64,000 bases of DNA, taken from assembly GCF_963853765.1 (NCBI RefSeq), contig NC_088858.1, forward strand, positions 9,176,001 through 9,240,000, given 5' to 3'. This document shows positions 26,901 through 53,516 of this stretch, one piece after another. The notes below the pieces were generated by a model. The model made no database searches. It was not told the DNA's origin and saw nothing but the letters and a program-made list of their open reading frames with translations. Both the position numbers and the translations under genes were made by a program. Source of the DNA: Magallana gigas. Taxonomy: Eukaryota. The first letter of the stretch is position 1. The number at the start of each line of letters is the position of its first letter.

Positions 26901-29534
26901 ACTTACAAGTTAATAGATTAGGATTAACGTTTCTGATTCCTTTAACATCAGGTGGTATACATCACGGGGCACATCCGACCTCAGCCATGTTTTGGTGTCA
27001 ACAGGAAGTTGCCGTCCCATGTTTTGGGACTGGTTGGAATGGCTGTGGCTCTGCCTCCTCCCACCATCACAGAACTACGCATAGAAAGCGACACTTTCAT
27101 AATGAGGCTCAATCCCGACTTCAGTATTATCTACTGTGATACTCTGTAAGTTTTCTTTTCTTGTATTTCATTGCATTATAGTCAAAATCATAATGTTGAT
27201 AATAAATAATTATAGGTAATTATTAAGACTTAAATTGTATCAAGATTGATCTAATTTTATGATATTGCAATTAATGTGATATTTTACCTTACCTGGATAC
27301 TTAATCGTTTATGCCTTTGAATGGAAAAAATAATTTGACCTCTCTTTGCTTGTTGATGTTAGGATCTCCCAGCTTTGTGATTGGTCCTCTGATGATGTCA
27401 TTGGGAAACCAATCTACGATCTCTGTCACCCAGCTGACCTAAACACAATGAAGAGAACCCACAAAGATTGTAAGAAAATAATCTTCTTGCAAAGACTCTT
27501 CCAAATATTTCATATAAATATCCTTAATTGTAGTTTTAAAAAACCTAAAATATTCAAGTAACTATAATAGATGCTGGATAATTTCAAGATGCACCTTTGG
27601 AAAATATTAATTAATTTCAGTGTAAATATTCCAAGTACATGTTTATATCTTCTTTTTCAGTATTAACGAAGGGTCAAGTTTTGTCCGACTACTTCAGAAT
27701 GATTAACAAGAATGGTGGCCATGTGTGGGCCCAGATATGTGCAAGTACTCTGTACAGTTCCAAGACATCTGACACTCACACAGTCCTGACCATCATCTAC
27801 ATCCTCAGGTAAAATTAGGGTGAAACAATCAGTACTCAACGAGTCTAGATTTGTTTCAGTAACTATTCTAAAACTCATGTCTTAATGCTCACAACAAAAT
27901 TCTGAGGTAAAATTATTTTTCTCATCTCTAAACTTTTTGTTTTTAGTGGAATAGAGTATGAAAACTGTGTTATGGACATATGTCAACTTCCTACATCAAT
28001 AAAAAAGGAGTTAGACAAGGAATCTTCAAGCAAGGATCTTGTCAGTCCCAGAGGTAAAATCAAAAAAGAAAATACCTTCAATATCGACAATCTTTTATGT
28101 GAAGAGCTGAAAGAATTACTAAATGATGGATTGCTTGATTTTGCAGACGAATCAAAAGATGGTGAAGAAAGTCGTCACAGTAAAAGTCCTGATAATGCCC
28201 AAGTGGATTCACATCCCCAAAGTGATGCATTACCTGGTGAACCTCCAAAAAAGAAGAGGCTTTCTAGCAATGGTTCAGAGCATTCAGAGGTGGAAGAGAT
28301 GCAAGCTTCTCCAAGAATGGATCACAGTTCTCCTCCAGTTTTTATATCACATGATGATGAGGAAGACACATCAAATTCAACAACTACCTTAAAGTTGAAC
28401 TGCAGCAAAGTTCTTTACAAAAACTCGAGGAGGAAAATGGACAGGCCTAGAAAAAGACAAAGGGGGAGTTTGGATAGTGATAGTTTGATTTTCAGTGACA
28501 GTTATGGAGCAGAAGTATCAAGCCCTGGCCACATCATACAAAGACAGTTATCCTGTTCGAGCCTCATGCACAACCATAATAACGTTTCGTCGCCTGTGGA
28601 CGACTACCATTCTCACTCAGCATCACCAAAGTGTTTGGAGGATTACAGCATGCCTGCACCAGAGGATCTCTCTCTGAGGTCACTGGGAGCAAGGCAGGAG
28701 AACATGACAAACACAAACAGAAAGAACTGTTGGAATTCTCCTTGTGGCGCTGACCAGAATGGCAACCGCAACATGCCATCTGTGAAATTTCTGGAAGATG
28801 TGATGAATAAACATTTGCCAAATCTGTCTCAACTATCTAACCATGATGTCAAGCAATCTTCTGCAAGCTTGAGTGATGACATTACAAATGGTGGTATTGT
28901 TTCAAATTCTATGAACAAACAGCAGTCACCTATTCAATGGACAGGCACAGAATCTGAAACACACCCTGCATCTAATCTGTTAAGGACACTATATGCAAAA
29001 CGAGAATCGGTCATTCGAAGCAGCAACAATTCGAGAAGTCTTTCTATGGAAAGTTCAGCCCTTAACATGCTGACACCTCCAGGAAACGAGGGCTTCAAGG
29101 AACAACTGACTCTAAATATACCACAGATATCAGTGAATGCCAAAGGATCAGTTCTCCCTTCCTATACTTCTGCTAGTCATCAAACTGTCACCACAGTGAA
29201 TGAAAGTTTCAACATGACCCCTCCTTCATCTGTATCACCCACAGAGAAATTAGTCTCCCCGTTTGGAATGGAAGGGAACTTTGATCATGTGTCTGCTGTG
29301 TGCGGCAGTCTGACCCATGTCACGAGTCCTCCCGTGACTCTGAAATCTCATACTTTTCCGCTCACTGTAGCCGCAGGAGTGACAGACTTTAACTGTGTCA
29401 AAAATACCAGCTACAATAACGTCTCCCCAGCATACCACATTAATGAATACCCCCATCTCACTCATGCACAGAACTCTTTCTTGTCTTACGATGTGAGGCC
29501 AGACTCTTGGTATTCCGTCTCTTATCAGTCATGA
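15884..29534 (+). CDS. trh: bHLH-PAS transcription factor, trachealess/NPAS1/NPAS3 orthologue (spliced; about 915 aa if exon 2066-2070 is included)
   Basis: Exons 15884-16122, 19680-19756, 22696-22785, 24077-24167, 26017-26115, 26322-26431, 26952-27145, 27363-27469, 27661-27808, 27947-29534, all AG/GT-bounded with matching phases. b[70 protein letters not shown]; [55 protein letters not shown]; [12 protein letters not shown]; PAS-B; long Ser/Pro-rich tail with NLS-like PPKKKR. These motifs match Trh/NPAS1/3 as I recall them. Confidence 0.95.
23716..24010. repeat. Compound (CT)n/(CA)n/(CTGT)n microsatellite in a trh intron
   Basis: Long CT runs at 23716-23740, 23817-23840 and 23897-23930, with a CA run and a CTGT run. 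Confidence 0.95.
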
Positions 29535-35851: not shown

Positions 35852-36177
35852 CATAGGCGTCGGAACCGGGTTTTTTTTGTTGTTGCAAAGTTAGACCATT
35901 AGGCACATAGCATCATGGAGGGTTCAGCCCCCCCCCCCCCACTTTTTTTCGCAGCAAAGATAATAGTTCCAATATTTACCTTGAAGAGATTGAAATATTA
36001 AGAAGTTGGAGTCATAGGTACACTAGCCCCCCCCCCCCCCCCCCCCTACGGATTAGGATTTTCATGATTTTGGGAATAAGGTGTTATTTTTTTTTTTTCT
36101 TGTGAAGATTTCTGAGGATTAGTCTAGCCCCACCCCCCCCCACCCCCCCCACTTTCAATTTGCTTCCGACGCCACTG
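35852..36177. mobile_element. 326-bp MITE with 5-bp TSD, about 310 bp upstream of the YeeE-like start codon
   Basis: TIRs CATAGGCGTCGGAA / TTCCGACGCCACTG (12/14); CATCT duplicated at 35847-35851 and 36178-36182; internal poly-C tracts. Confidence 0.8.
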
Positions 36178-36488
36178 CATCTCCACCCTCGCGGATTAGA
36201 AATATTAGAGGTTAATCAAGTTAGTTAGTTTGGGTAAGTCTGTCCCATAAAAATGCTGATACGTTCCCGTACAATATTTCCAAAAAAGAACTTTACAGCC
36301 AAACTTATTTTTTTCCGGAGAAAAACCCGTTCAGGGTACCGTATTTTATAACGTTGTTGACATTCCGTTGTAATGCATGGGCCCACATGTAGTATTTTCA
36401 TCAATGATTTAGCATAATTTCTGACGCTTTGTGATATATATTTTTGAAAATAATGAGTTAATGCACTGTGTTGTTGAGTGATCCGAAC

Positions 36489-39400
36489 ATGACGAGCCGG
36501 CGAAATCTACAGGAGGTGCCGATGGGGGATGACAATCGCCCAACCCCCACCAGAACCGTTACATCCCTGGCAGTATCTGCAGCTTGCGGCCTCATGTTTG
36601 GGTTTGCAATTGAAAAAGGAAAAGGTTCAAAAGAACACATTATTTTTTTTTCTATTAATGAAATTGCACAGTGGTACTGTATGTATATACAGTTCCCAAG
36701 CATGCCGACTTAATTGTACATGTGTACTGAGTATTGTATAATGAAAGTAAACAAACTGCATGCATGAGAAGGTTACGTATTTGTACAATACATGTAGATA
36801 CAATGCAAGGACTTCTTTATTATAGTCTAAGTAAAATTGAACCCTGACTTTCCTATTCCTATAATAACTATAATTGATGATCATGAGAAATTGTACATTA
36901 AAATCTGTTAAATTTTCATTTCAGTTTATGAACCTGCTGTAGTAAAAAATCAGATGTTACTTTCACAATTTGTTATGATGAAAATGTTCCTTTCTGGAAT
37001 AATATCAGGTAACAAAAAATTAGCACATGCTTAACCATCTTCAGAATGTCAAAGTTTTGTGGTTTGTGTGAAGTTCTGTAATCACAAAACCTTAATTGAC
37101 ATTTGCTGAGCTGTGAAATGCATTATAAACATTACCTTGTATGTACATGTAAAAAAGGGTGATGCTGGTGAATGGATGATAACTGGTGCAGCTGAATGTT
37201 TTTGCAGGGATGTTTGTATTGGCCGTGATGTCTATGCTGCCGTTCACCAGACGTCAGTACCTGGGGGCTAAGTCCGTCTTCGTGCGGGGTCTCCGTGAGA
37301 AGGGATTCCTGACCACCCTCTCAGGGGGAGCCTTGTTAGGATCAGGGATGGCCATAGCTGGAAGTGTAGGGATACATTTGCGTTTTAAATATTCATAAAT
37401 TTCCATAAAAAAGGAAAATGAAACATGAAACTACATGGACTAGAACAATATTTAGGTTCACACCTGTAACAAGTGTTCACAAGTGTAAAGAGTTGATATA
37501 CTTGTGTGTCATAAATATTTCATATACATGTACTTACTGTCCTTTTGATAACATATATTTATTCTTTAGGGAATAATGCAAGGTAGGATTGTATTCCTCT
37601 AGTGATGTAGGTGCAAGGCACAGGTTTGTCACCTATTCTTGCTTTCTTTTCTTTCCTTCAGTGTCCAGGAGTAATTCTTGCACAGCTTGGATCAGGAACA
37701 CAGAATTCAAGTACATTTTTTCTATCAAATCAAAATATCTAATATGAAAAGTTGTGAAATTCAGATTTGCAGAAACATGCAAGACTGACTTATATATCAC
37801 ATACTTTTTTCACCCTGTTATCTATGACTAGAAAACAGTGCACATTCTTCTATAAAAAAGATACACCTTATGAGGTGCCATTGTAGTATTTTCAAGTTAC
37901 ATGTATTTTCAAATGTACATGTGTGATATCAAAAATGATTATTGTTATCATTGACCATAATTTCATAACCAGTATTTATTATTAAAAAAATAAGCAGAGT
38001 ATCAGATGTACAATTTTTTTTTTTTTTTTATGTGTATTGTGAAATGACTTGAACAGTTATAATCATGTTGTCTTTAGAATCCATAAAAATTTGAAAAAAT
38101 GCCTTGCAAAAGGATAACTCTGATGTTAACTGCATAAAAATTTTGTGGTTAACATGCTATTTGTGATTAAATTACAGTGTACACATTACTGGGAGCATTA
38201 TTCGGGACCCTGCTCTATGGGATCCTAGAACCAGTCGTCACAGACCTGACCAAACCAGCACAAACGATACGATTCCAATTGTAAGGATCACTTAACCCAT
38301 CGTTAAAAACAGCTAAATTAAATTATTAAATTCAAAACTGCTCTCTGGAGTACATCTATTATAAACATTGATTTTATGCTGATTGCATGATGCTGATTTT
38401 GATTGCAGTTTGTACAATGTGTATGGATCTCCCTTCTTTGTGATGGCCTTGCCATCTGCTGCAGTTCTTTCCTTAGTTGTGTTCACTTTGGAGTTAGCTT
38501 ATCCCTGGGAAGAAGAAATAAATGTAAAGTATTTTATAGTTAATCAGTAGCTATAACTGCATACGAACAGTTCAATATATCACATTTTGCTAGTACAACG
38601 TGTGTACTGATTTTAATATTCTAAATGCATACCTTGTATTTTATTGACAGATTACAGACTCTGTCTACCAATCTAGCAGCTGGATTACCTCCCCTGCATG
38701 GCCACCATTTGTATCTGGAATTGCTGTTGGCAGTTTGCAAATACCTGTTGTATTAGTCATTGGAGACACCTTAGGTATAAAGTATATTCTAATAAGCTGA
38801 ATTACTAACAAATGTATTGTGAATTGATGGAATTCTATGGTACATGTACTAGTATGCCATTATTTACCTGAATGTTTAAATGCACGATGAAAGATAGTTC
38901 AGTGTATGTAATATTCCCTTGTGATTTATTTCATTGACAGGAGCCAGCAGTAGCTTCTGTACCATCACGTCTCAGTTTTTTCTTCACAAGTCCTCTAAGA
39001 GATTATCACCTTATCTCCTGAAATTCCAATCAGGCATTGAAAATTGGTGGCAGGTACAGAATCTTGTCAATGTCATCATAGTACATATGTTCAATTTTTC
39101 TCTAAATTACTGAAAAAGAAAAAAATGGTTTGTTTTCCTATCCATTGACAGGTTGCATTTGTTTTGAGCTCTATATTTGGGGCTTTCTTGTCCTCTATCC
39201 TGTCTGGGACGTACGGTTCTGTGGCAGGAGTCTCCATTGTTCAGTCATTTGTTGGAGGAGCTCTGATACTGTTTGGAGCCCGAATGGCTGGAGGATGTAC
39301 CAGGTATACACCATAATACATGTACACTCTGAAATACACTGTATCTCTGGAGGATGTACCAGGTATACACCATAATACAGGTACACTCTGAAATACACTG

Positions 39401-42400
39401 TATCTCTGGAGGATGTACCAGGTATACACCATAATACAGGTACACTCTGAAATACACTGTATCTTTGGAGGATGTACCAGGTATACACCATAATACACGC
39501 TCACTCTGAAATACACTGTATCTCTGGAGGATGTACCAGGTATACACCATAATACACGTACACTCTGTAATACACTGTATCTCTGGAGGATGTACCAGGT
39601 ATACACCATAATACACGTACACTCTGAAATACACTGTATCTCTGGAGGATGTACCAGGTATACACCATAATACACGTACACTCTGTAATACAATGTATCT
39701 CTGGAGGATGTACCAGGTATACACCATAATACACGTACACTCTGAAATACACTGTATCTCTGGAGGATGTACCAGGTATACACCATAATACAGGTACACT
39801 CTGAAATACACTGTATCTCTGGAGGATGTACCAGGTATACACCATAATACATGTACACTCTGAAATACACTGTATCTCTGGAGGATGTACCAGGTATACA
39901 CCATAATACATGTACACTCTGAAATACACTGTATCTCTGGAGGATGTACCAGGTATACACCATAATACAGGTACACTCTGAAATACACTGTATCTCTGGA
40001 GGATGTACCAGGTATACACCATAATACACGTACACTCTGTAATACACTGTATCTCTGGAGGATGTACCAGGTATACACCATAATACACGTACACTCTGTA
40101 ATACAATGTATCTCTGGAGGATGTACCAGGTATACACCATAATACACGCTCACTCTGAAATACACTGTATCTCTGGAGGATGTACCAGGTATACACCATA
40201 ATACAGGTACACTCTGAAATACACTGTATCTCTGGAGGATGTACCAGGTATACACCATAATACACGTACACTCTGAAATACACTGTATCTCTGGAGGATG
40301 TACCAGGTATACACCACAATACACGTACACTCTGAAATACACTGTATCTCTGGAGGATGTACCAGGTATACACCACAATACACGTACACTCTGAAATACA
40401 CTGTATCTCTGGAGGATGTACCAGGTATACACCATAATACACGTACACTCTGAAATACACTGTATCTCTGGAGGATGTACCAGGTATACACCATAATACA
40501 CGTACACTCTGAAATACACTGTATCTCTGGACGATGTACCAGGTATACACCATAATACACGTACACTCTGTAATACAATGTATCTCTGGAGGATGTACCA
40601 GGTATACACCATAATACACGTACACTCTGAAATACACTGTATCTCTGGAGGATGTACCAGGTATACACCATAATACACGTACACTCTGTAATACAATGTA
40701 TCTCTGGAGGATGTATCAGGTATACCATAATACACGTACACTCTGAAATACACTGTATCTCTGGAGGATGTACCAGGTATACACCACAATACACGTACAC
40801 TCTGCAATACAATGCATCTCTGGAGGATGTATCAGGTATACCATAATACACGTACACTCTGAAATACACTGTATCTCTGGAGGATGTACCAGGTATACAC
40901 CATAATACACGTACACTCTGCAATACACTGTATCTCTGGAGGATGTACCAGGTATACACCATAATACACGTACACTCTGAAATACACTGTATCTCTGGAG
41001 GATGTACCAGGTATACACCATAATACACGTACACTCTGGAATACACCGTATCTCTGGAGGATGTACCAGGTATACACCATAATACACGTACACTCTGAAA
41101 TACACCGTATCTCTGGAGGATGTACCAGGTATACACCATAATACACGCTCACTCTGAAATACACCGTATCTCTGGAGGATGTACCAGGTATACACCATAA
41201 TACACGTACACTCTGAAATACACTGTATCTCTGGAGCATGTACCAGGTATACACCATAATACACGCTCACTCTGAAATACACTGTATCTCTGGAGGATGT
41301 ACCAGGTATACACCATAATACACGTACACTCTGAAATACACTGTATCTCTGGAGGATGTACCAGGTATACACCACAATACACGTACACTCTGAAATACAC
41401 TGTATCTCTGGAGGATGTACCAGGTATACACCACAATACACGTACACTCTGTAATACACTGTATCTCTGGAGGATGTACCAGGTATACACCACAATACAC
41501 GTACACTCTGAAATACACTGTATCTCTGGAGGATGTACCAGGTATACACCATAATACACGTACGCTCTGAAATACACTGTATCTCTGGAGGATGTACCAG
41601 GTATACACCACAATACACGTACGCTCTGAAATACACTATCTCTGGAGGATGTACCAGGTATACACCAGAATACACGTACGCTCTGAAATACACTATCTCT
41701 GGAGGATGTACCAGGTATACACCATAATACATGTACGCTCTGAAATACACTGTATCTCTGGAGGATGTACCAGGTATACACCATAATACACGTACACTCT
41801 GAAATACACTGTATCTCTGGAGGATGTACCAGGTATACACCATAATACACGTACACTCTGAAATACAATGTATCTCTGGAGGATGTACCAGGTATACACC
41901 ATAATACACGTACACTCTGCAATACAATGTATCTCTGGAGGATGTACCAGGTATACACCATAATACACGTACACTCTGAAATACACTGTATCTTTGGAGG
42001 ATGTACCAGGTATACACCATAATACACGTACACTCTGAAATACACCGTATCTCTGGAGGATGTACCAGGTATACACCATAATACACGTACACTCTGAAAT
42101 TACTGTATCTCTGACACTTTGTCAACAATACAAGTGCATGTATGGAAACAAAATGTACATGTACACAAAACTTCCCAAGTTTAACCTTGTAGAATAATTT
42201 TATTGTAAAGAATATACTATTTAAACTTTTAAGATTGACCTTAGGATTGCGAGTAATTTTATGTGACCCTGACTACATTTTGTAAGATCATATGTAGTTC
42301 CACATTTATGCACGGAAAATTAAGATTGAATATAAAAGGCTTAAAAGGAAAAAAGAATTCAGACCGACCCAAATAATAACATTTATACATGCATACAATT

Positions 42401-42705
42401 CTTAGGTATTCAGGAGAGCATGAAATATTATGGGTAATATCAGAATACCTCATACTCTCAAAAAGTAAAAATCTCACAAATAAATTTTTAAAAAATATGG
42501 TAAAAGTTATCTGGAAAAAGCATTTATTTACAAGTGATTCTTTTGTAAATCCTTTTAAATAACAAATCTTTAATGAATGTTTCCTCTTTATAGTGGGCAT
42601 GGACTCTCTGGAATAGGTTTATTAAACCTTCTGTCCATCAGCACCATGGCTGCAATGTTTGTTGGGGGAGTTTTAACAGCCATGATCCTGCAGTGGATCA
42701 GTTAG
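36489..42705 (+). CDS. YeeE/YedE family (Sulf_transp, thiosulfate transporter TsuA-like) multi-pass membrane protein, 381 aa, 10 exons
   Basis: Exons 36489-36624, 36925-37008, 37208-37365, 37662-37710, 38178-38280, 38409-38523, 38651-38774, 38941-39053, 39152-39303, 42594-42705 (1146 nt, phases consistent). Family motifs: FGFAIEKGKVYEP..NQM...FVMMKMFLS; GGALLGSGMAIAGSCPGVILAQLG; WPPFVSGIAVGSLQ; LGASSSFCT; FVGGALILFGARMAGGCTSGHGLSG. Many hydrophobic Gly-rich segments. Confidence 0.88.
39288..42110 (+). repeat. 59-bp minisatellite, 48 units, spanning the exon 9/intron 9 boundary of the YeeE-like gene
   Basis: Consensus CTGGAGGATGTACCAGGTATACACCATAATACACGTACACTCTGAAATACACTGTATCT. I counted 48 units (four of 57 bp, the last of 58 bp). 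The first 16 nt of unit 1 are coding. Confidence 0.97.
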
Positions 42706-45567: not shown

Positions 45568-48500
45568 CTAGGAGTCCTGGTTTCTTGAGTATGGATGTGG
45601 ATTACAGCTAAGTCCCTGTCTCTTCGAGCGTCGGTAGGCAAGCATTGGGACCTGAACGCCACTGGCCTCCGACCCCAATTTATTCCCAGGGATCCAATTC
45701 ATGCCATGCATCATTTGGTTCCCCATGCTACTCTCTGGAACAAGTTTAGTACATCTATCATTAATAGTTGGTCCAGTTTCAATGGACAAACAGGTACATA
45801 AGACCAATTATCAGTACGAGGGTTGTTCGGAAATTATTGAGACATTTACTCTTATTTCCTTAGGGAAAAAGATAAACCCTTCAAATTTCCCCAAAATGTA
45901 AACCAGGATAGGGTTCATCACTGCGAAAAGTTTTGTGTCCATAGCCTGATTAGATCATTCCTGGTAAACTGACCAACTTGCCTTCGTCCAGTGGACCGGC
46001 GCAACCGCAAACTTACCGCAATGGCATTTTAACGCAGCTCATTGGTCCTATGTTTTAAACACCTTACAAACAAAATTAAATAGAATTAATTTTTCATTTC
46101 TCATCTTTTGTTTACATTTTAAGATGTCAACATTCGCACATTCTCTCCATTCTAGATTTTTGTGGAAAAAATCGGGTTATTTCTAAGCAAAAGTCAAATT
46201 ACTGTAAGATGTCTCCTACAGTCATTCTGTGTACATATTTTAGAACTGTTGACATTTGTAAGTGTGTAAAAAGTACTTGATATTTAGTCACTTTGTCTGA
46301 ATTCTAGTTAATCAATTAGTGAACAAAGACGATAAACTGAAGCTCTTTATCCCTTGCCATCGTAATTTTTTTGTTAAAGCAATTGGGTGCCCTGAAAAAG
46401 GTTTTTTCCGAAATTTCCACCAATTTGATGATATTCGCTGCGCCGCATTGACGTCAAAATTCAATATACCGTCGCTGTCAGATTTCTATTGCTTGGTAAA
46501 TATACCTGTACCATATCCGTATTTCAACTCGAACAGTAGTGAAACTTGATCAAAAGTTAGTCACAAAAAATAGCAAAATGAAAATATATAATCTGATTTC
46601 TTTTATTATAAACGGTAAGTTTGCGGACACTTAGATAGATGAAGTTGTAGTTTTATTATTCTCCGAGTTTATGCTTGCGCCGGGTACCCCGACCACCGAT
46701 TTGTTAACTACCGTTGTAAACAAAATATCAAACATTTTCTAAATATTACTTTCTTTAATTATTTGTTAAGGTTTCTTCAATGTTCATGCCAATTTTCACC
46801 CTAATTCGTCACTTAGAAAGGGAAATATCCGAGTTGTCTCAATAATTTCAGAACAACCCTCGTATATGTAACACCATAAGAAAGGTTAAAATGAATGCAG
46901 ATTTTTTTTCATCTCAACAGCAAGCACTCCACCCCACCCTTCAAAATAAATTAAATAAAAATCTACAAGTATTACCAGTGTACATATATATTCTATAAAA
47001 GGGGTATGAGGCTTTAAGAAGAAAGCTCTTTCAGTTATCAGTGTACACAAACAAAGAGAAAGTTAAGTTAATAAATTTACTATTTATCCAAATGTTATAG
47101 AAAGTTGAAGATTATTATCACATGTGTACATGAAGTTTTACAAAGCCAAATGATATCTACCCTCTTCTGATGGACTTTGGAGTGGTGGTGTCTTGCGGAA
47201 TCTCTTCTGATCCCCATTCCCACCAGACTTGAAGCTTGATGGTAGATTTTCTTGTATATCATGCCACCTCTGTCTCTCTTTCAGAAAGCGAGACAAAGTG
47301 TAACCGGGTCCCTGTAATATAATGATATTACCGGTGTCTAACAATCTATGTGTATCATCGCCTAAATTCAAAGCAAAGATGCACATGTACAATAAAAAGT
47401 TTGATCTACAGGAAAATCTATTCAAACTCATCTTATGACATGTTGCTTTTATTCACAATACATGTAGTTGTACATGTAAACTATATATATCAATTCATCA
47501 TATTTTAATCAATTACCGGTACTGAAAACTCACCTTTTCTTTTAATTTTCTTCTTCCAAATCTGATTGGTCTTCCAGACTGTAAAAAATTTTGTTCGTGA
47601 AACTTTACTTATATGCCTGGTTCTTTATATACCTGATAGACTATTACACATTCTTTGCCAATCCTTGTTTTACCAATTGAAAGTAAACTACAGTAGAAAA
47701 TCAGTTAACATCTTTAAGATTCGTTCTTATAACGTAATCATACCTTGGCCATCATTCTAGTCACCCTAGCCCTGAACGCCAGCTGTGAAGACTTTGGTAC
47801 ATACTGGTCCAGTGAGCTGGACAGAATCTGCTGGAACTGACGGTCAGACTCCGACTCAATGTCCCCAGAATCATTCTCCCACCATCGGATTATTCCTGGA
47901 TTTCCACAAGCTGGTCCCGACTCATAATAAAAATCACTGTGCTCATCATCAGCTGAAGAAGAAAGTAAAAAATATTCTCTTGCAGTTTTCTAAGTCAATC
48001 TGTAAATGCAATGTAATTTTTGCAAACAGTTTTTTTTCTTCAAAATAAGATAAATGTGCGTTGAAATATACATATCTACATGCACTTTACATCAAACTAT
48101 CATTTTTAAAACAAAGATTAAAGTGTTGGGTTCATTACAAGTACAGGTATATCTATATGAGTCTATCAAGCTACTTTTGGACAAAAACAAATTTCTCATA
48201 TTTAAAATGAAATAACTAATTATTTTTCATTATTTTCTTCTTGGTATGTCACATTGATTTAAAAAAAAATATACTACAGCCATAAAACTGACCTTCTCTT
48301 GCTTCATCATTGGTCAGCAAACCATCACTCTCACTGCTGCTGAGACCAGAACTACTCTCCCTGTAAGATGTACATAGTAAATATATATTAAAAGGAACAT
48401 TTACTATTTAAAAATAAGAAACAGTCTTTTGGTATCTAATATGTACAAGACAAAAAAATCCCTCAAATTCAATATGAAAAGAAAAAAATAATGTCTGTAA

Positions 48501-49195
48501 AATTACACTTACATATTGCTCGCTGTATCCATGCCATTTTCATCTTTACCACCCTTCGATTGATCAAAACTAGAGTACTCTCCCCTGGACTTAGAACTCC
48601 TCTTCCTTTTCCCAGGATACACCTCTTCTTCCTTTCCAAACACTATGTCTCTATCATTATTTGATGTCATATCAGACATGCAAGACCTGGGTTTTTGTGG
48701 TCTGGATTTGAGATCAGTAGTTCCAGTAGGAGGTTTCATACAATTAGTTTCTGAATCTATGGCCATCGATTTGTACTTCTTTCTTCGTCTCTGAGGTCTA
48801 AGAGGGGAAATAGTGCTCTCGTTCACAGAATCTGACTCAACTGATGGTATAAAGCTTGAAGTGATAGGCATTGATAGTCTTGTTATTTTTTCAATGTCAT
48901 CTGAGTCACTATTGCGGGTAAGATTCCCAAAATAATCTCTCAGGGCTTCGTCATAGCTACTTTCCGAAGCCTCGCTAATATTCCCACAATCCAAGAGAAG
49001 GGGTCTCCGTTTTTTTCCTTTCTTTTTTTTATACTGACGCTTGTTTGAGATTGAATGACTTGTGCTTTTGACATTTGAAGCTGACTCTTCCAAAGCATTA
49101 GCGAGATCTTGCACCAACTCATCCATACTTACTAGGCGTGAGTTTGAGTACACTCGAAGATTTTGAAACTGACGAACAATATTATGATGATCCAT
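45568..49195 (-). CDS. GPATCH2: G-patch domain-containing protein 2 (about 440 aa)
   Basis: Exons (minus) 49195-48513, 48360-48293, 47952-47744, 47578-47534, 47311-47161, 45734-45568. The last acceptor is uncertain; this choice keeps the frame, total 1323 nt. Motifs MDELVQDLANALEES, KRQYKKKKGKKRR, RRRKKYKSMAID, SSSESDGLLTNDEAREADDEHSDFYYE..CG..GIIRWWE, and a C-terminal G-patch SSMGNQMMHGMNWIPGNKLG...GL resemble human GPATCH2. Confidence 0.85.
45817..46862. mobile_element. Tc1/mariner-type non-autonomous element in the last intron of GPATCH2
   Basis: 28-bp TIRs CGAGGGTTGTTCGGAAATTATTGAGACA (45817-45844) and 46835-46862 (27/28 match); TA duplication at 45815-45816 and 46863-46864; no transposase ORF. 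Confidence 0.9.
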
Positions 49196-51742: not shown

Positions 51743-53516
51743 ATGGCTGCACCACCAAAAGGCAAGGGTTTTATGGCAAAAGGGCCAAATACAATTGACC
51801 AAAGGTTTGCTGAAAGGCTTTTCAAGCATAGCCAAGAAAGGTAATATAGGAATAAAAACATATTTGAAAAATACCTTTTGAATAACTGGTAATTTTAGCA
51901 ATGAATTTATCGTTGCTAAGGAAAACACAGTGGAAAATGTGAATAGTGCACCACTGTATTTTTAAAGATGGGTGGTATTTTCATGCACAGATCTTGCCTG
52001 TATACGCATAGTCCATTAAGAAAGAGACAAAACAGCAATGTGTATATTATTAGTGACAATGAATGTTCAAAATCATGTCTTGGATGTAAATTTTTTGCAT
52101 TTTTAAGATTAAAATGCAATTATTTTTGCTTTTAACGCAATTATGTAGTGAGAAAATGTCATTTAAATAGTAGAAACCAACTATTATACATTTCCTTTAT
52201 CTATCAGTCAAAGAAATCATAACTTTTTACAGATAGGGTATAGACTCTAATATTAATTGTTACAGTACTGCAGTAGAGTATTTTTAAGTATCTGCAGTAT
52301 CAATGTAAACATACTTTTTATTGTTTTAATGTAATATATTGTAAACAGCCTAGATGACTATAAGAACATCTGGCAAAAAAACTCCTGTATCCCTGTAGCT
52401 TTTTCTTTTTACATTCATGTATGTATACTATAGAACTTGTGATAATGTTAACAATTTTAATGATAATCCAATTTAGAAGAATGGTATAATTTAATGATTT
52501 ATGATACTTTTGCAGGGTACCAGAATACTCGCGCCTACACCCAGTTGTCCCACGTCTGTATACACAGGAATGGAAAACAGATATGAAAAACAGAAATCTC
52601 ATTACCAAGGTACATGTAATATATACAAATAATTTATACCTAGCATTATAAAAATCATCTTCACTAGCTAGAGGGTTTACAATCCACTTCGCTCCTCTAC
52701 AAACCTTGGCAGATTTAGCCAATGTTTTTTAGAAATAACACAGCACCCTCTAGCGATTGAGTTAAATTGGAGCAGCTAAAATACATATTTTCATATTTGA
52801 TGTATATACAAAATAGAATATAGATCAAAAAACCCATATATTTGTAAAAATAAATTGTATGGTATTCATTAATCATGTAAACATTGTAATAATGATTGTT
52901 TTTAAATTTTATTCTTGTATGAAAATACAATGAACACAGTCAATTAGTAGATTCCCTGCAATCACCCTTATTCACAGCCAATCAAATTCCGTTGTGCAAG
53001 TTTTGATTTTTTCGGCTAAATCTGTAAGGGGTTGTAGAGGAGCAGAGTGGATTGTAAACCCTTAATTGGCTATCGAAAATAAATAACAATATATATTTCA
53101 CAACCCAGTACATGCATTTTATTCAGATACGGGTACCCATTCAATGCACATCATAATTGCTTTATTTTCAATGCGAGTTCAGTTTGAATACCTTCAAATA
53201 AAACTTTAATTTCAATTGATCTTAAATGTACCCTAATTATCAAATTCACTACTGTTATAATAGGTATATGAAATAATTCTTTTTGGAACAGAATGCAGAG
53301 CTTGGAGGTATTCCTCATTATGAACATGATGAAAATCTCTTCCTGGACAAGCGGGAACAAATGCATTACAATGTTGAGGATCGCACAAGGATAGAATCCA
53401 AATATCCTCACATGGACAGGGCTACTCTTCTCCGTCCGAATTTCCATCATGAGACCTCTAAATATCAGAGTGAGCTAATGTTCAGAAGAGATGAAGATTA
53501 TGTAGAGTCTGTTTAA
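51743..53516 (+). CDS. TEX43: TEX43/SPMIP10-like sperm flagellar microtubule inner protein, 138 aa, 3 exons
   Basis: Exons 51743-51840, 52516-52609, 53292-53516 (417 nt, phases 2 and 0). The protein segment VPEYSRLHPVVPRLYTQEWKTDMKNRNLITKNAELGGIPHYEHDENLFLDKREQMHYNVEDR...SKYQS aligns by eye with human TEX43 as I recall it (PR.Y...WK..M..RN...K.AE..GI......LFL...E......EDR...S.YQS). The gene model is solid; the identity needs BLAST confirmation. Confidence 0.72.
52672..53062. mobile_element. MITE with ~49-bp TIRs (PIF/Harbinger-like) in TEX43 intron 2
   Basis: AGGGTTTACAATCCACTTCGCTCCTCTACAAACCTTGGCAGATTTAGCC (52672-52720) versus its imperfect inverse at 53014-53062; flanks TAG/TAA. Confidence 0.75.

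What the first reader, a model, noticed from the sequence alone, without database searches (positions are those of the whole stretch)
36489..42705. Intron-rich animal member of the YeeE/YedE thiosulfate-transporter family
Seen: a complete 381-aa, 10-exon gene with YeeE/YedE motifs, including Cys in AGSCPG, SFCT and GGCTSG. Established: bacterial YeeE (TsuA) takes up thiosulfate using conserved cysteines and works with the small sulfurtransferase YeeD; thiosulfate is a main end product of mitochondrial sulfide oxidation in marine invertebrates. I know of no functionally characterised animal member and no vertebrate orthologue, but cannot verify that here. Nine spliceosomal introns argue for long residence in the host genome. 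Inference: a sulfur-compound transport route for a sulfide- and hypoxia-exposed animal, with an unknown partner in place of YeeD (none lies in the window).
Basis: partly seen in the sequence, partly recalled or inferred. Interest (0 to 1): 0.75.

Follow-up and report, generated by a model that had tools for sequence, protein, structure and literature searches.

The report
Oyster YeeE/YedE-family sulfur transporter gene
This is a real, expressed, intron-rich Pacific oyster gene for a membrane protein of the bacterial YeeE/YedE sulfur-transporter family; databases already list it (auto-named "TsuA"), but it belongs to an unstudied eukaryotic branch that lacks one key cysteine and probably sits in the membrane the other way round.

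Summary
A 10-exon, 381-aa, all GT-AG gene lies at 36489-42705 (+). RNA contigs from three studies confirm introns 1-8. The protein is identical to RefSeq XP_011432323.3, "thiosulfate transporter TsuA [Magallana gigas]", so the gene is already annotated.

Family and fold are solid: Pfam PF04143 scores 128 bits, and an AlphaFold model (pLDDT 94) matches only the YeeE structures in the PDB.

It is not a TsuA orthologue:
- NCBIfam TsuA and YedE models score far below their cut-offs.
- The loop-A cysteine essential in TsuA is Tyr47 here and is never Cys in 44 named eukaryotes.
- No TusA/YeeD domain was found in the genome.

Only C127 and C343 match TsuA cysteines. C263 (SFCT) is specific to animals.

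The nearest prokaryotic relatives are split two-gene pairs, mostly alphaproteobacterial, with one cysteine each. Homologues occur across eukaryotes. No vertebrate, arthropod, nematode or cnidarian appeared among the named hits.

New here: the lysine/arginine distribution predicts a membrane orientation opposite to TsuA in 26 of 27 eukaryotic members.

My best reading is a YeeD-independent, gradient-driven conduit for thiosulfate or another sulfane-sulfur anion, probably outward. The function is untested, and I found no paper on any animal member.

The parts
36400..36488 (+). 5' UTR (minimum extent)
   Evidence: RNA contigs of runs X2 and X3 cover the stretch from 36400. The X2 contig continues 42 nt beyond the laid stretch.
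36489..36624 (+). Exon 1 (ATG; aa 1-45): hydrophilic N-tail and start of TM1, with C33
   Evidence: Model. The 36624/36925 junction is seen in three RNA runs.
36925..37008 (+). Exon 2 (loop A with Tyr47, and H2/H3)
   Evidence: Tyr47 aligns to StYeeE C22 and EcTsuA C25.
37208..37365 (+). Exon 3 (basic H3-H4 loop RRQYLGAKSVFVRGLREKG; ends ..IAGS)
   Evidence: The loop holds 6 K+R.
37662..37710 (+). Exon 4 (starts C127-PG, the loop B cysteine)
   Evidence: C127 aligns to StYeeE C91. This position is Cys in 43 of 44 named eukaryotes.
38178..38280 (+). Exon 5
38409..38523 (+). Exon 6 (central helix H7 and acidic loop PWEEEIN)
38651..38774 (+). Exon 7 (H8, start of loop C)
38941..39053 (+). Exon 8 (GASSSFC263T; the animal-specific cysteine)
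   Evidence: This position is Cys in 26 of 31 animals and 0 of 13 other eukaryotes.
39152..39303 (+). Exon 9 (H10-H11, GARMAGGC343T; loop D)
   Evidence: This exon alone passes the Pfam PF04143 cut-off (30.6 bits). C343 aligns to StYeeE C293 and the position is invariant in 44 of 44.
39288..42113 (+). 59-bp x 48 tandem array filling most of intron 9. Each unit repeats the last 16 nt of exon 9 plus the splice donor.
   Evidence: Tandem Repeats Finder: period 59, 48.1 copies, 96% matches. The subject of a separate finding, s1-403202.
42594..42705 (+). Exon 10 (SGHGLSG..., last TM helix, stop TAG at 42703-42705)
   Evidence: The whole model is identical to RefSeq XP_011432323.3. The X2 transcript contig runs 471 nt past exon 9, which is 112 nt of CDS plus about 359 nt of 3' UTR.

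Best explanation
The locus is a functional, vertically inherited Pacific oyster gene for a single-chain YeeE/YedE-family (PF04143) membrane protein with the hourglass YeeE fold.

It belongs to a eukaryote-wide subfamily that keeps only the two central cysteines. These are loop B C127 (StYeeE C91) and loop D C343 (StYeeE C293). Its nearest prokaryotic relatives are split two-gene heterodimers with one cysteine each. It is not an orthologue of the bacterial thiosulfate importer TsuA. It lacks the loop-A cysteine that faces YeeD, and no YeeD/TusA was detected in the genome.

Charge distribution predicts that it is inserted in the membrane upside-down relative to TsuA. In that orientation the N-terminus faces the cytosol, as does the vestibule that is periplasmic in TsuA.

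Inferred mechanism: a small sulfur anion with an exposed sulfane sulfur passes down its gradient through the central constriction, handed between C343 and C127, with no sulfurtransferase partner. Thiosulfate is the likeliest substrate; hydropersulfide or polysulfide is the alternative. Given the flipped orientation and the fact that animals make thiosulfate rather than assimilate it, net flux is probably from the cytosol outward or into a lumen. The animal-specific C263 on the predicted cytosolic face may act as a third relay cysteine.

Shown: gene structure, expression, family, fold, cysteine pattern and phylogenetic spread. Inferred: topology, substrate and direction.
For: - Gene and expression.
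- Family and fold: PF04143 at 128.1 bits, E 6.7e-37, covering profile positions 2-309 of 310. AlphaFold2 model with pLDDT 94 and pTM 0.91. In Foldseek against the PDB only YeeE entries 6leo, 6lep, 8k1r and 8j4c pass E 0.001 (TM up to 0.78, E 1.7e-8). A profile of the clade hits 6leo at E 6.5e-23.
- Not TsuA or YedE: NCBIfam scores of 25.5 (cut-off 400), 15.3 (645), 20.6 (350) and 15.9 (200). EcTsuA and EcYedE sit on branches of about 5 and 7 changes per site.
- Cysteines.
- No PF01206 (TusA) hit in the 564-Mb genome, while the same search rings in 10 of 14 control genomes.
- Split relatives: the upstream gene equals the oyster C-half and the downstream gene equals the N-half, each with one Cys.
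- Topology: EcTsuA has 2 K+R on the side bearing loops C and D and 14 on the side bearing loops A and B. That matches its known orientation (PMC7449682, PMC11073785). The oyster protein has 14 versus 2, the reverse. 26 of 27 eukaryotes share the oyster's sign, and 10 of 12 prokaryote rows share TsuA's. Echinoderm members carry 100-180-aa hydrophilic N-terminal extensions without a signal peptide.
- Precedent for two-cysteine members moving sulfur: YedE1E2 imports zero-valent sulfur and both cysteines are essential (PMC10812762). PmpB and PmpA cysteines match C91 and C293 (PMC11582611).
- YeeE alone can conduct thiosulfate and may act as a channel (PMC7449682, PMC11073785).
Against: - No transport, localisation or topology experiment exists for any eukaryotic member.
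- The positive-inside rule is statistical. The same basic residues could instead form an anion-attracting vestibule.
It sits about 5 residues into helix H9, not at the position pseudo-symmetric to TsuA C22, and sequence alignment of the two halves could not pair loops A and C.
- In E. coli TsuA the loop-A cysteine is essential (PMC7449682), so conduction of thiosulfate without it is not guaranteed.
- Bacterial neighbourhoods of the closest relatives gave no functional clue.
- The characterised two-cysteine system YedE1E2 imported zero-valent sulfur and did not export it (PMC10812762).
- The arginine of loop C at the TsuA entrance aligns to Asp254 in the oyster (the alignment is uncertain there).
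Confidence: 0.55

Rival explanations
1. It is a TsuA-like thiosulfate importer. It takes up thiosulfate as bacterial YeeE does, with an unknown cytosolic sulfurtransferase in place of YeeD.
For: It has the same fold and two of the three relay cysteines, and RefSeq names it TsuA. If the protein is flipped, C127, C343 and C263 would run from outside to cytosol with the same polarity as TsuA's C293, C91 and C22 (inference).
Against: TsuA equivalog models score far below their cut-offs. The loop-A Cys is absent in 44 of 44 eukaryotes. No TusA domain was found. From general knowledge, animals produce thiosulfate from sulfide oxidation and are not known to assimilate it into cysteine.
Confidence: 0.1
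2. It is a sulfane-sulfur (persulfide, polysulfide or zero-valent sulfur) transporter like the two-cysteine YedE1E2/PmpAB heterodimers or SoxT. It moves reactive sulfur species for redox homeostasis or signalling rather than thiosulfate.
For: Its cysteine pattern (one in loop B, one in loop D) is that of PmpAB/YedE1E2 (PMC11582611, PMC10812762), and its nearest prokaryotic relatives are split one-cysteine pairs. Its wide spread in aerobic eukaryotes, including fungi and diatoms, fits a housekeeping redox role better than a sulfide-habitat adaptation.
Against: The relatives found here are 172-209 aa per half, not about 130-140 aa. tblastn of the oyster protein found no match in the plasmid collection; S. 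meliloti YedE1E2 (Sma1053/1052) should be on pSymA there, though I did not check that. So the link to the tested proteins is by family only.
Confidence: 0.2
3. It is a selenium-compound transporter related to YedE/FdhT, supplying selenoprotein synthesis.
For: There are weak matches to the YedE models. YedE-like proteins are linked to selenium in prokaryotes (PMC11582611, PMC9312934). From general knowledge, oysters have many selenoproteins.
Against: The scores of 20.6 and 15.9 bits are far below the cut-offs of 350 and 200. EcYedE is the most distant branch in the tree. The family is present in ascomycete fungi, which from general knowledge lack selenoproteins, and it is missing from the vertebrates among named hits, which have them.
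Confidence: 0.07
4. It is bacterial contamination, a recent horizontal transfer, or a dead gene.
For: The family is mainly prokaryotic, and the best prokaryotic matches reach 46% identity in segments.
Against: The gene has nine GT-AG introns confirmed by RNA and lies on a chromosome-scale contig. Orthologues in other oysters are 79-80% identical, and scallops group with oysters in the tree. Two diverged paralogues share intron positions with it. The reading frame is intact and the key residues are conserved.
Confidence: 0.01

Closest known systems
TsuA/YeeE thiosulfate transporter (E. coli b2013; Spirochaeta thermophila, PDB 6LEO, 8K1R)
   Same: Same Pfam family and same hourglass fold, with two inverted halves and four re-entrant loops. 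The loop B and loop D cysteines are conserved in the motifs GxCPG and GGCTSGH. The N-half-like part comes first in the single chain, followed by the C-half-like part.
   Different: About 17-18% identity. The loop A cysteine (C22/C25), essential in TsuA and adjacent to YeeD, is Tyr. The loop C arginine is not conserved. No YeeD/TsuB partner was detected. NCBIfam equivalog scores are far below their cut-offs. The predicted membrane orientation is opposite. There is an extra animal-specific Cys in loop C/H9.
Split YeeE/YedE heterodimers: PmpA/PmpB (Serratia), YedE1/YedE2 (Cupriavidus, Sinorhizobium), and the uncharacterised 172-209-aa pairs found here (mostly Alphaproteobacteria)
   Same: There is one conserved cysteine per half, at the loop B and loop D positions. 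The pairs found here share 32-46% identity with the oyster protein, including near-identical motifs (FGFxxEKxRVFEP, NWWQV, GARxAxGCTSGHG).
   Different: They are two genes, with the C-half gene upstream, rather than one chain. The charge bias predicts the TsuA-like orientation. The experimentally tested YedE1E2 proteins are shorter (about 14 kDa each). tblastn with the oyster protein found no match in the plasmid collection.
SoxT1A/SoxT1B (Hyphomicrobium denitrificans), YeeE-like sulfane-sulfur importers
   Same: Same family, and a full-length single chain that moves sulfur species other than free thiosulfate.
   Different: SoxT proteins have the three TsuA-type cysteines and work with periplasmic SoxYZ and cytoplasmic TusA or rhodanese. 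None of that context exists here.
YedE/FdhT putative selenium transporter (E. coli b1929)
   Same: Same superfamily, and it shares the GxRxAxGC motif.
   Different: Its halves are in the opposite order: its N-half aligns to the oyster C-half. It is the most distant branch in the tree, and its models score far below their cut-offs.

Membership tests
YeeE/YedE family (Pfam PF04143 Sulf_transp) | Profile match above the curated gathering score over the whole domain | tested here: met
   128.1 bits against a cut-off of 27, E 6.7e-37, profile positions 2-309 of 310. Both halves pass on their own.
YeeE/YedE family (Pfam PF04143 Sulf_transp) | YeeE fold: two inverted halves, nine TM helices, four re-entrant loop and short-helix elements | tested here: met
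   AlphaFold2 model with pLDDT 94 has the expected helix pattern. Foldseek finds only YeeE entries below E 0.001, with TM 0.78 to 6leo.
YeeE/YedE family (Pfam PF04143 Sulf_transp) | Conserved cysteines in loops B and D | tested here: met
   C127 aligns to St C91 and C343 to St C293. These positions are Cys in 43 of 44 and 44 of 44 eukaryotes.
TsuA/YeeE thiosulfate importer (orthologue level) | Score above the NCBIfam TsuA model cut-offs | tested here: not met
   NF052577 scores 25.5 against 400, and NF041049 scores 15.3 against 645.
TsuA/YeeE thiosulfate importer (orthologue level) | Third essential cysteine in loop A (St C22, Ec C25) | tested here: not met
   It aligns to Tyr47. The position is never Cys in 44 named eukaryotes or in the nearest prokaryotes.
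TsuA/YeeE thiosulfate importer (orthologue level) | TusA-family partner YeeD/TsuB | tested here: not met
   No PF01206 match in the whole genome at E 0.01, while controls ring in 10 of 14 genomes. Caveat: a 70-residue domain split by introns could escape a six-frame search.
TsuA/YeeE thiosulfate importer (orthologue level) | Thiosulfate uptake activity | not testable with these tools
   Needs complementation or flux assays.
YedE/FdhT selenium transporter | Score above the NCBIfam/TIGRFAM cut-offs | tested here: not met
   NF033796 scores 20.6 against 350, and TIGR04112 scores 15.9 against 200.
PmpAB / YedE1E2 split zero-valent-sulfur transporter | Two four-TM subunits of about 130-140 aa, each with one essential Cys | tested here: not met
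   The oyster protein is a single 381-aa chain. The cysteine pattern is shared (PMC11582611). tblastn found no match in the plasmid collection.

The most novel reading that the evidence does not exclude
Eukaryotic YeeE/YedE proteins form a distinct two-cysteine subfamily inserted upside-down relative to bacterial TsuA. They would act as partner-independent exporters of thiosulfate or sulfane sulfur: the missing exit route for the end product of sulfide detoxification. Animals would have added a third relay cysteine (C263) on the cytosolic face. The family would have been overlooked because vertebrates, arthropods and nematodes appear to lack it.
Probability: 0.3. Interest if true: 0.7.

Novelty: new member of a known kind. 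Interest (0 to 1): 0.5.

Why it matters
How animals move thiosulfate and reactive sulfane sulfur across membranes is largely unknown, although sulfide oxidation to thiosulfate is central to sulfide tolerance in benthic invertebrates. This gene family is a concrete, testable candidate. It is retained from sponges to echinoderms and hemichordates, and in fungi and protists. It is missing from the standard animal models among the hits seen here, which would explain why nobody has studied it.

The analysis also warns that the RefSeq name 'thiosulfate transporter TsuA' over-states what is known. The protein lacks a residue essential in TsuA, lacks the partner, and is predicted to face the other way. 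A family whose orientation flips between lineages would also be a useful case for studying how inverted-repeat transporters evolve.

Tried and rejected
- Exon-by-exon Pfam scan: only exon 9 passed. It was useful only as a first check.
- phmmer of exon 9 against the PDB found nothing. The full protein gave only marginal hits (E 0.097). A family profile was needed.
- Gene neighbourhoods of the closest prokaryotic homologues showed no conserved context. I examined five places carrying one Bacteroidota protein, one further bacterial locus, and 36 flanking ORFs from 12 loci, mostly alphaproteobacterial. There was no enrichment of TusA, rhodanese, SQR or persulfide dioxygenase; one Lactamase_B hit appeared among the 36 ORFs. 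This gave no functional clue.
- tblastn of the oyster protein against 72,556 plasmids found no match. I could not tie it to the tested YedE1E2 proteins.
- Profile-profile alignment of the N-half against the C-half recovered the loop B to loop D correspondence but not loop A to loop C. The pseudo-symmetric equivalent of C263 stays undetermined.
- N-glycosylation sequons in the predicted outer loop are not conserved, so they give no support for the topology.
- One literature search was badly framed and returned only irrelevant papers. The oyster-Vibrio and vent-snail hits concern bacterial genes.
- Contamination, recent transfer and pseudogene readings were rejected, as set out under the rival explanations.
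- A mitochondrial presequence is not evident. The N-tails are acidic and hydrophilic, so a mitochondrial inner-membrane location is not supported by sequence. It is not excluded.

Full report
**1. The observation**

I rebuilt the gene from the raw sequence. Ten exons lie on the + strand between 36489 and 42705. All nine introns are GT..AG, and the 1146-nt reading frame ends in TAG. The 381-aa product has just four cysteines: C33, C127 (AGSCPG), C263 (SSSFCT) and C343 (AGGCTSG).

RNA contigs from three runs of three different studies contain all eight exon junctions between exons 1 and 9 at exactly these positions. One 1636-nt contig spans exon 1 to exon 9 and runs 471 nt further, which fits exon 10 plus a 3' UTR.

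I could not lay reads on intron 9. It holds a 59-bp x 48-copy tandem array that begins with the last 16 nt of exon 9 and its donor, which is the subject of another finding of this scan. The junction is still supported. The model is identical, residue for residue, to RefSeq XP_011432323.3. Full-length variants of the protein were also called on transcript contigs of about 1.3-1.5 kb, too short to contain the intron.

The window therefore comes from the Pacific oyster, Magallana (Crassostrea) gigas. NCBI already annotates the gene as 'thiosulfate transporter TsuA', earlier 'UPF0394 inner membrane protein YeeE'. UniProt K1PMH0 is an older, mis-spliced model of the same gene.

**2. Family and fold**

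- The whole protein matches Pfam PF04143 (Sulf_transp) at 128 bits, E 6.7e-37, over positions 2-309 of 310.
- An AlphaFold2 model built on a 58-sequence alignment has mean pLDDT 94 and pTM 0.91. It shows the expected pattern of long helices alternating with short re-entrant helices.
- Foldseek against the PDB returns only the four YeeE entries (6leo, 6lep, 8k1r, 8j4c) below E 0.001. The TM-score reaches 0.78, and the next hits are noise with TM below 0.2.
- A profile of the clade finds 6leo at E 6.5e-23.

Membership of the YeeE/YedE family is secure.

**3. It is not a TsuA orthologue**

NCBIfam's TsuA models score 25.5 and 15.3 bits against cut-offs of 400 and 645. The YedE models score 20.6 and 15.9 against 350 and 200. 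In a tree of 101 sequences, E. coli TsuA and YedE sit on branches of about 5 and 7 changes per site.

In StYeeE three cysteines form the relay: C22 in loop A, C91 in loop B and C293 in loop D. All three are essential in E. coli (PMC7449682). C22 lies next to the active cysteine of YeeD in the complex (PMC11073785).

Sequence and profile alignments place oyster C127 on C91 and C343 on C293. C22 (Ec C25) aligns to Tyr47. Among 44 named eukaryotic homologues:
- position 343 is Cys in all 44;
- position 127 is Cys in 43;
- position 47 is never Cys;
- position 263 is Cys in 26 of 31 animals, from sponge to echinoderms, and in none of 13 other eukaryotes.

The third is an animal-specific addition in a different loop. 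A six-frame search of the 564-Mb genome found no TusA/YeeD domain. A short domain split by introns could have been missed.

**4. Relatives**

Two large protein searches list homologues in the following groups:
- oysters, scallops, an ark clam, a freshwater mussel and gastropods, including freshwater Lymnaea and Pomacea;
- a brachiopod, a bryozoan, an annelid and a priapulid;
- all five echinoderm classes and a hemichordate;
- a freshwater sponge and rotifers;
- holozoan protists, chytrids and ascomycetes;
- an oomycete, diatoms, a green alga, a cryptist, an amoebozoan, a cercozoan and a heterolobosean.

No vertebrate, arthropod, nematode or cnidarian appears among the named hits. This is absence within the reach of those searches, not proof of absence.

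Within animals the tree roughly follows the species tree: oysters with scallops at 98, echinoderms together, holozoan protists nearby.

The oyster genome has two further multi-exon paralogous loci on contig C1, about 40-55% identical. They share intron positions with the window gene just before the CPG motif and inside GCT|SGH. Together with the nine introns, this shows long residence in animal genomes.

**5. Nearest prokaryotes**

A scan of 185,579 species genomes ranks Alphaproteobacteria first (Hyphomicrobiaceae, Rhodospirillales, Acetobacteraceae, Xanthobacter and others), at 32-46% identity.

In 75 of 78 loci the homologue is split into two adjacent genes. The upstream gene (about 172-182 aa) corresponds to the oyster C-half, with loops C and D and one Cys in GCTSGH. 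The downstream gene (about 206 aa) corresponds to the N-half, with loops A and B and one Cys in CPG.

This is the architecture described for PmpA/PmpB and YedE1/YedE2. Their single cysteines match C293 and C91 (PMC11582611). YedE1E2 was shown to import zero-valent sulfur, and both cysteines were needed (PMC10812762). The pairs found here are longer than those proteins. I could not link them directly, and their gene neighbourhoods are not conserved.

Whether the eukaryotic gene descends from the mitochondrial ancestor is unresolved. The tree is rooted on very long branches, and fungi rather than animals sit next to the prokaryotes.

**6. Predicted topology**

In the YeeE fold the following lie on one side, which I call X:
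- the N-terminus;
- the H3-H4 and H6-H7 loops;
- the mouths of loops C and D.

The following lie on the other side, Y:
- the mouths of loops A and B;
- the H7-H8 and H10-H11 loops;
- the C-terminus.

In StYeeE, Y is the cytoplasm. YeeD binds there, next to loop A, and is fused to the C-terminus in some species. X carries the periplasmic thiosulfate site at C293 (PMC7449682, PMC11073785).

Counting Lys+Arg in aligned loops gives these results:

| Sequences | K+R on X | K+R on Y |
|---|---|---|
| EcTsuA | 2 | 14 |
| Oyster protein | 14 | 2 |

- The EcTsuA count agrees with the positive-inside rule and its known orientation.
- 26 of 27 eukaryotes have X greater than Y. The exception is Willaertia.
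- 10 of 12 prokaryote rows have Y greater than X. The two exceptions are methanogen pairs.

The switch is visible in single motifs. The H7-H8 loop reads ERWRPWRAE in Alphaproteobacteria and ELAYPWEEE in the oyster. The H3-H4 loop of the oyster is RRQYLGAKSVFVRGLREKG. Echinoderm members add 100-180 hydrophilic residues at the N-terminus without a signal peptide, which also argues for a cytosolic N-terminus.

I therefore predict that eukaryotic members are inserted in the opposite orientation to TsuA. This is an inference from sequence statistics and has not been shown.

**7. Mechanism**

The most economical reading is a partner-independent, gradient-driven conduit for a small anion carrying an exposed sulfane sulfur. 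The anion would be relayed by C343 and C127 through the hourglass constriction.

Thiosulfate is the best-documented substrate of the fold. YeeE alone conducts it in liposomes, and the authors consider a channel mode (PMC7449682, PMC11073785). Persulfide or polysulfide is the documented substrate class of the two-cysteine relatives.

Two things suggest net outward flux. Established physiology says animals produce thiosulfate by mitochondrial sulfide oxidation and do not assimilate it. The vestibule that is external in TsuA is predicted to face the cytosol here.

If the protein is flipped, C127, C343 and C263 run from outside to cytosol in the same order as C293, C91 and C22 in TsuA. So C263 may be a convergent third relay cysteine. 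I could not measure this, because no model coordinates were available and loops A and C could not be aligned.

The N-tails do not look like mitochondrial presequences.

**8. Novelty and verdict**

The gene's existence and family are already in RefSeq and UniProt, and the literature notes eukaryotic YeeE-like proteins (PMC11073785). I found no paper on an animal or other eukaryotic member.

- the demonstration that the 'TsuA' name is not earned at orthologue level;
- the two-cysteine subfamily and its split relatives, mostly alphaproteobacterial;
- the animal-specific cysteine;
- the three oyster paralogues;
- the predicted inversion of topology.

Noticed in passing
window 39288-42113: A 59-bp unit repeated 48 times (96% matches) fills most of intron 9. 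Each unit starts with the last 16 nt of exon 9 plus the GT donor, giving about 44 exact copies of the splice-donor context. 59 is not a multiple of 3, so use of a later donor would shift the frame.
   Followed up: partly
G000:C1:46828979-46833807 (-) and G000:C1:42331148-42337118 (-); loci L090-L093: Two further multi-exon YeeE/YedE paralogues in the oyster genome, 40-55% identical to the window gene and closer to the Lingula and Potamilus proteins. They keep the GCT|SGH and ..GA|CP.. intron positions. Neither has Cys at the position equivalent to C263 (SSSYITV and SSCYATV). I did not build full gene models or check expression.
   Followed up: partly
loci L010-L070, e.g. L023:3992-4507 and L023:4530-5156: The closest prokaryotic relatives, mostly Alphaproteobacteria, are split gene pairs with the C-half gene upstream of the N-half gene. 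The eukaryotic single chain joins them in the opposite order to the operon, as TsuA does relative to PmpAB.
   Followed up: yes
L082, L087 (Methanoregula, Methanogenium split pairs): These archaeal pairs show the eukaryote-like Lys/Arg bias (X greater than Y), unlike the bacterial pairs. This hints that orientation has flipped more than once in this family.
   Followed up: no
P0288 (Willaertia magna): This is the only eukaryotic homologue with the bacterial-type charge bias (X 3, Y 11). It may be a separate transfer from bacteria or contamination.
   Followed up: no
P0244 (Acanthaster planci, 817 aa): The homologue is annotated as fused to an amidase domain (PF01425). This is probably two neighbouring genes merged by the gene predictor.
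   Followed up: no
window 27972-29534 (+): A 520-aa intronless open reading frame about 7 kb upstream of the gene has no Pfam match. Three other ORFs downstream (47138-47431, 48509-49195, 52318-52722, all -) also have none.
   Followed up: partly
window 36030-36050 and 36125-36150: A run of about 20 C, and interrupted C-runs (cccacccccccccaccccccccc), lie about 340-460 bp upstream of the start codon, near the likely promoter.
   Followed up: no
P0095 (UniProt K1PMH0, 359 aa): This older oyster gene model is the same gene with mis-called exons. It is 85% identical over a gapped alignment, whereas the current RefSeq model is 100% identical.
   Followed up: yes
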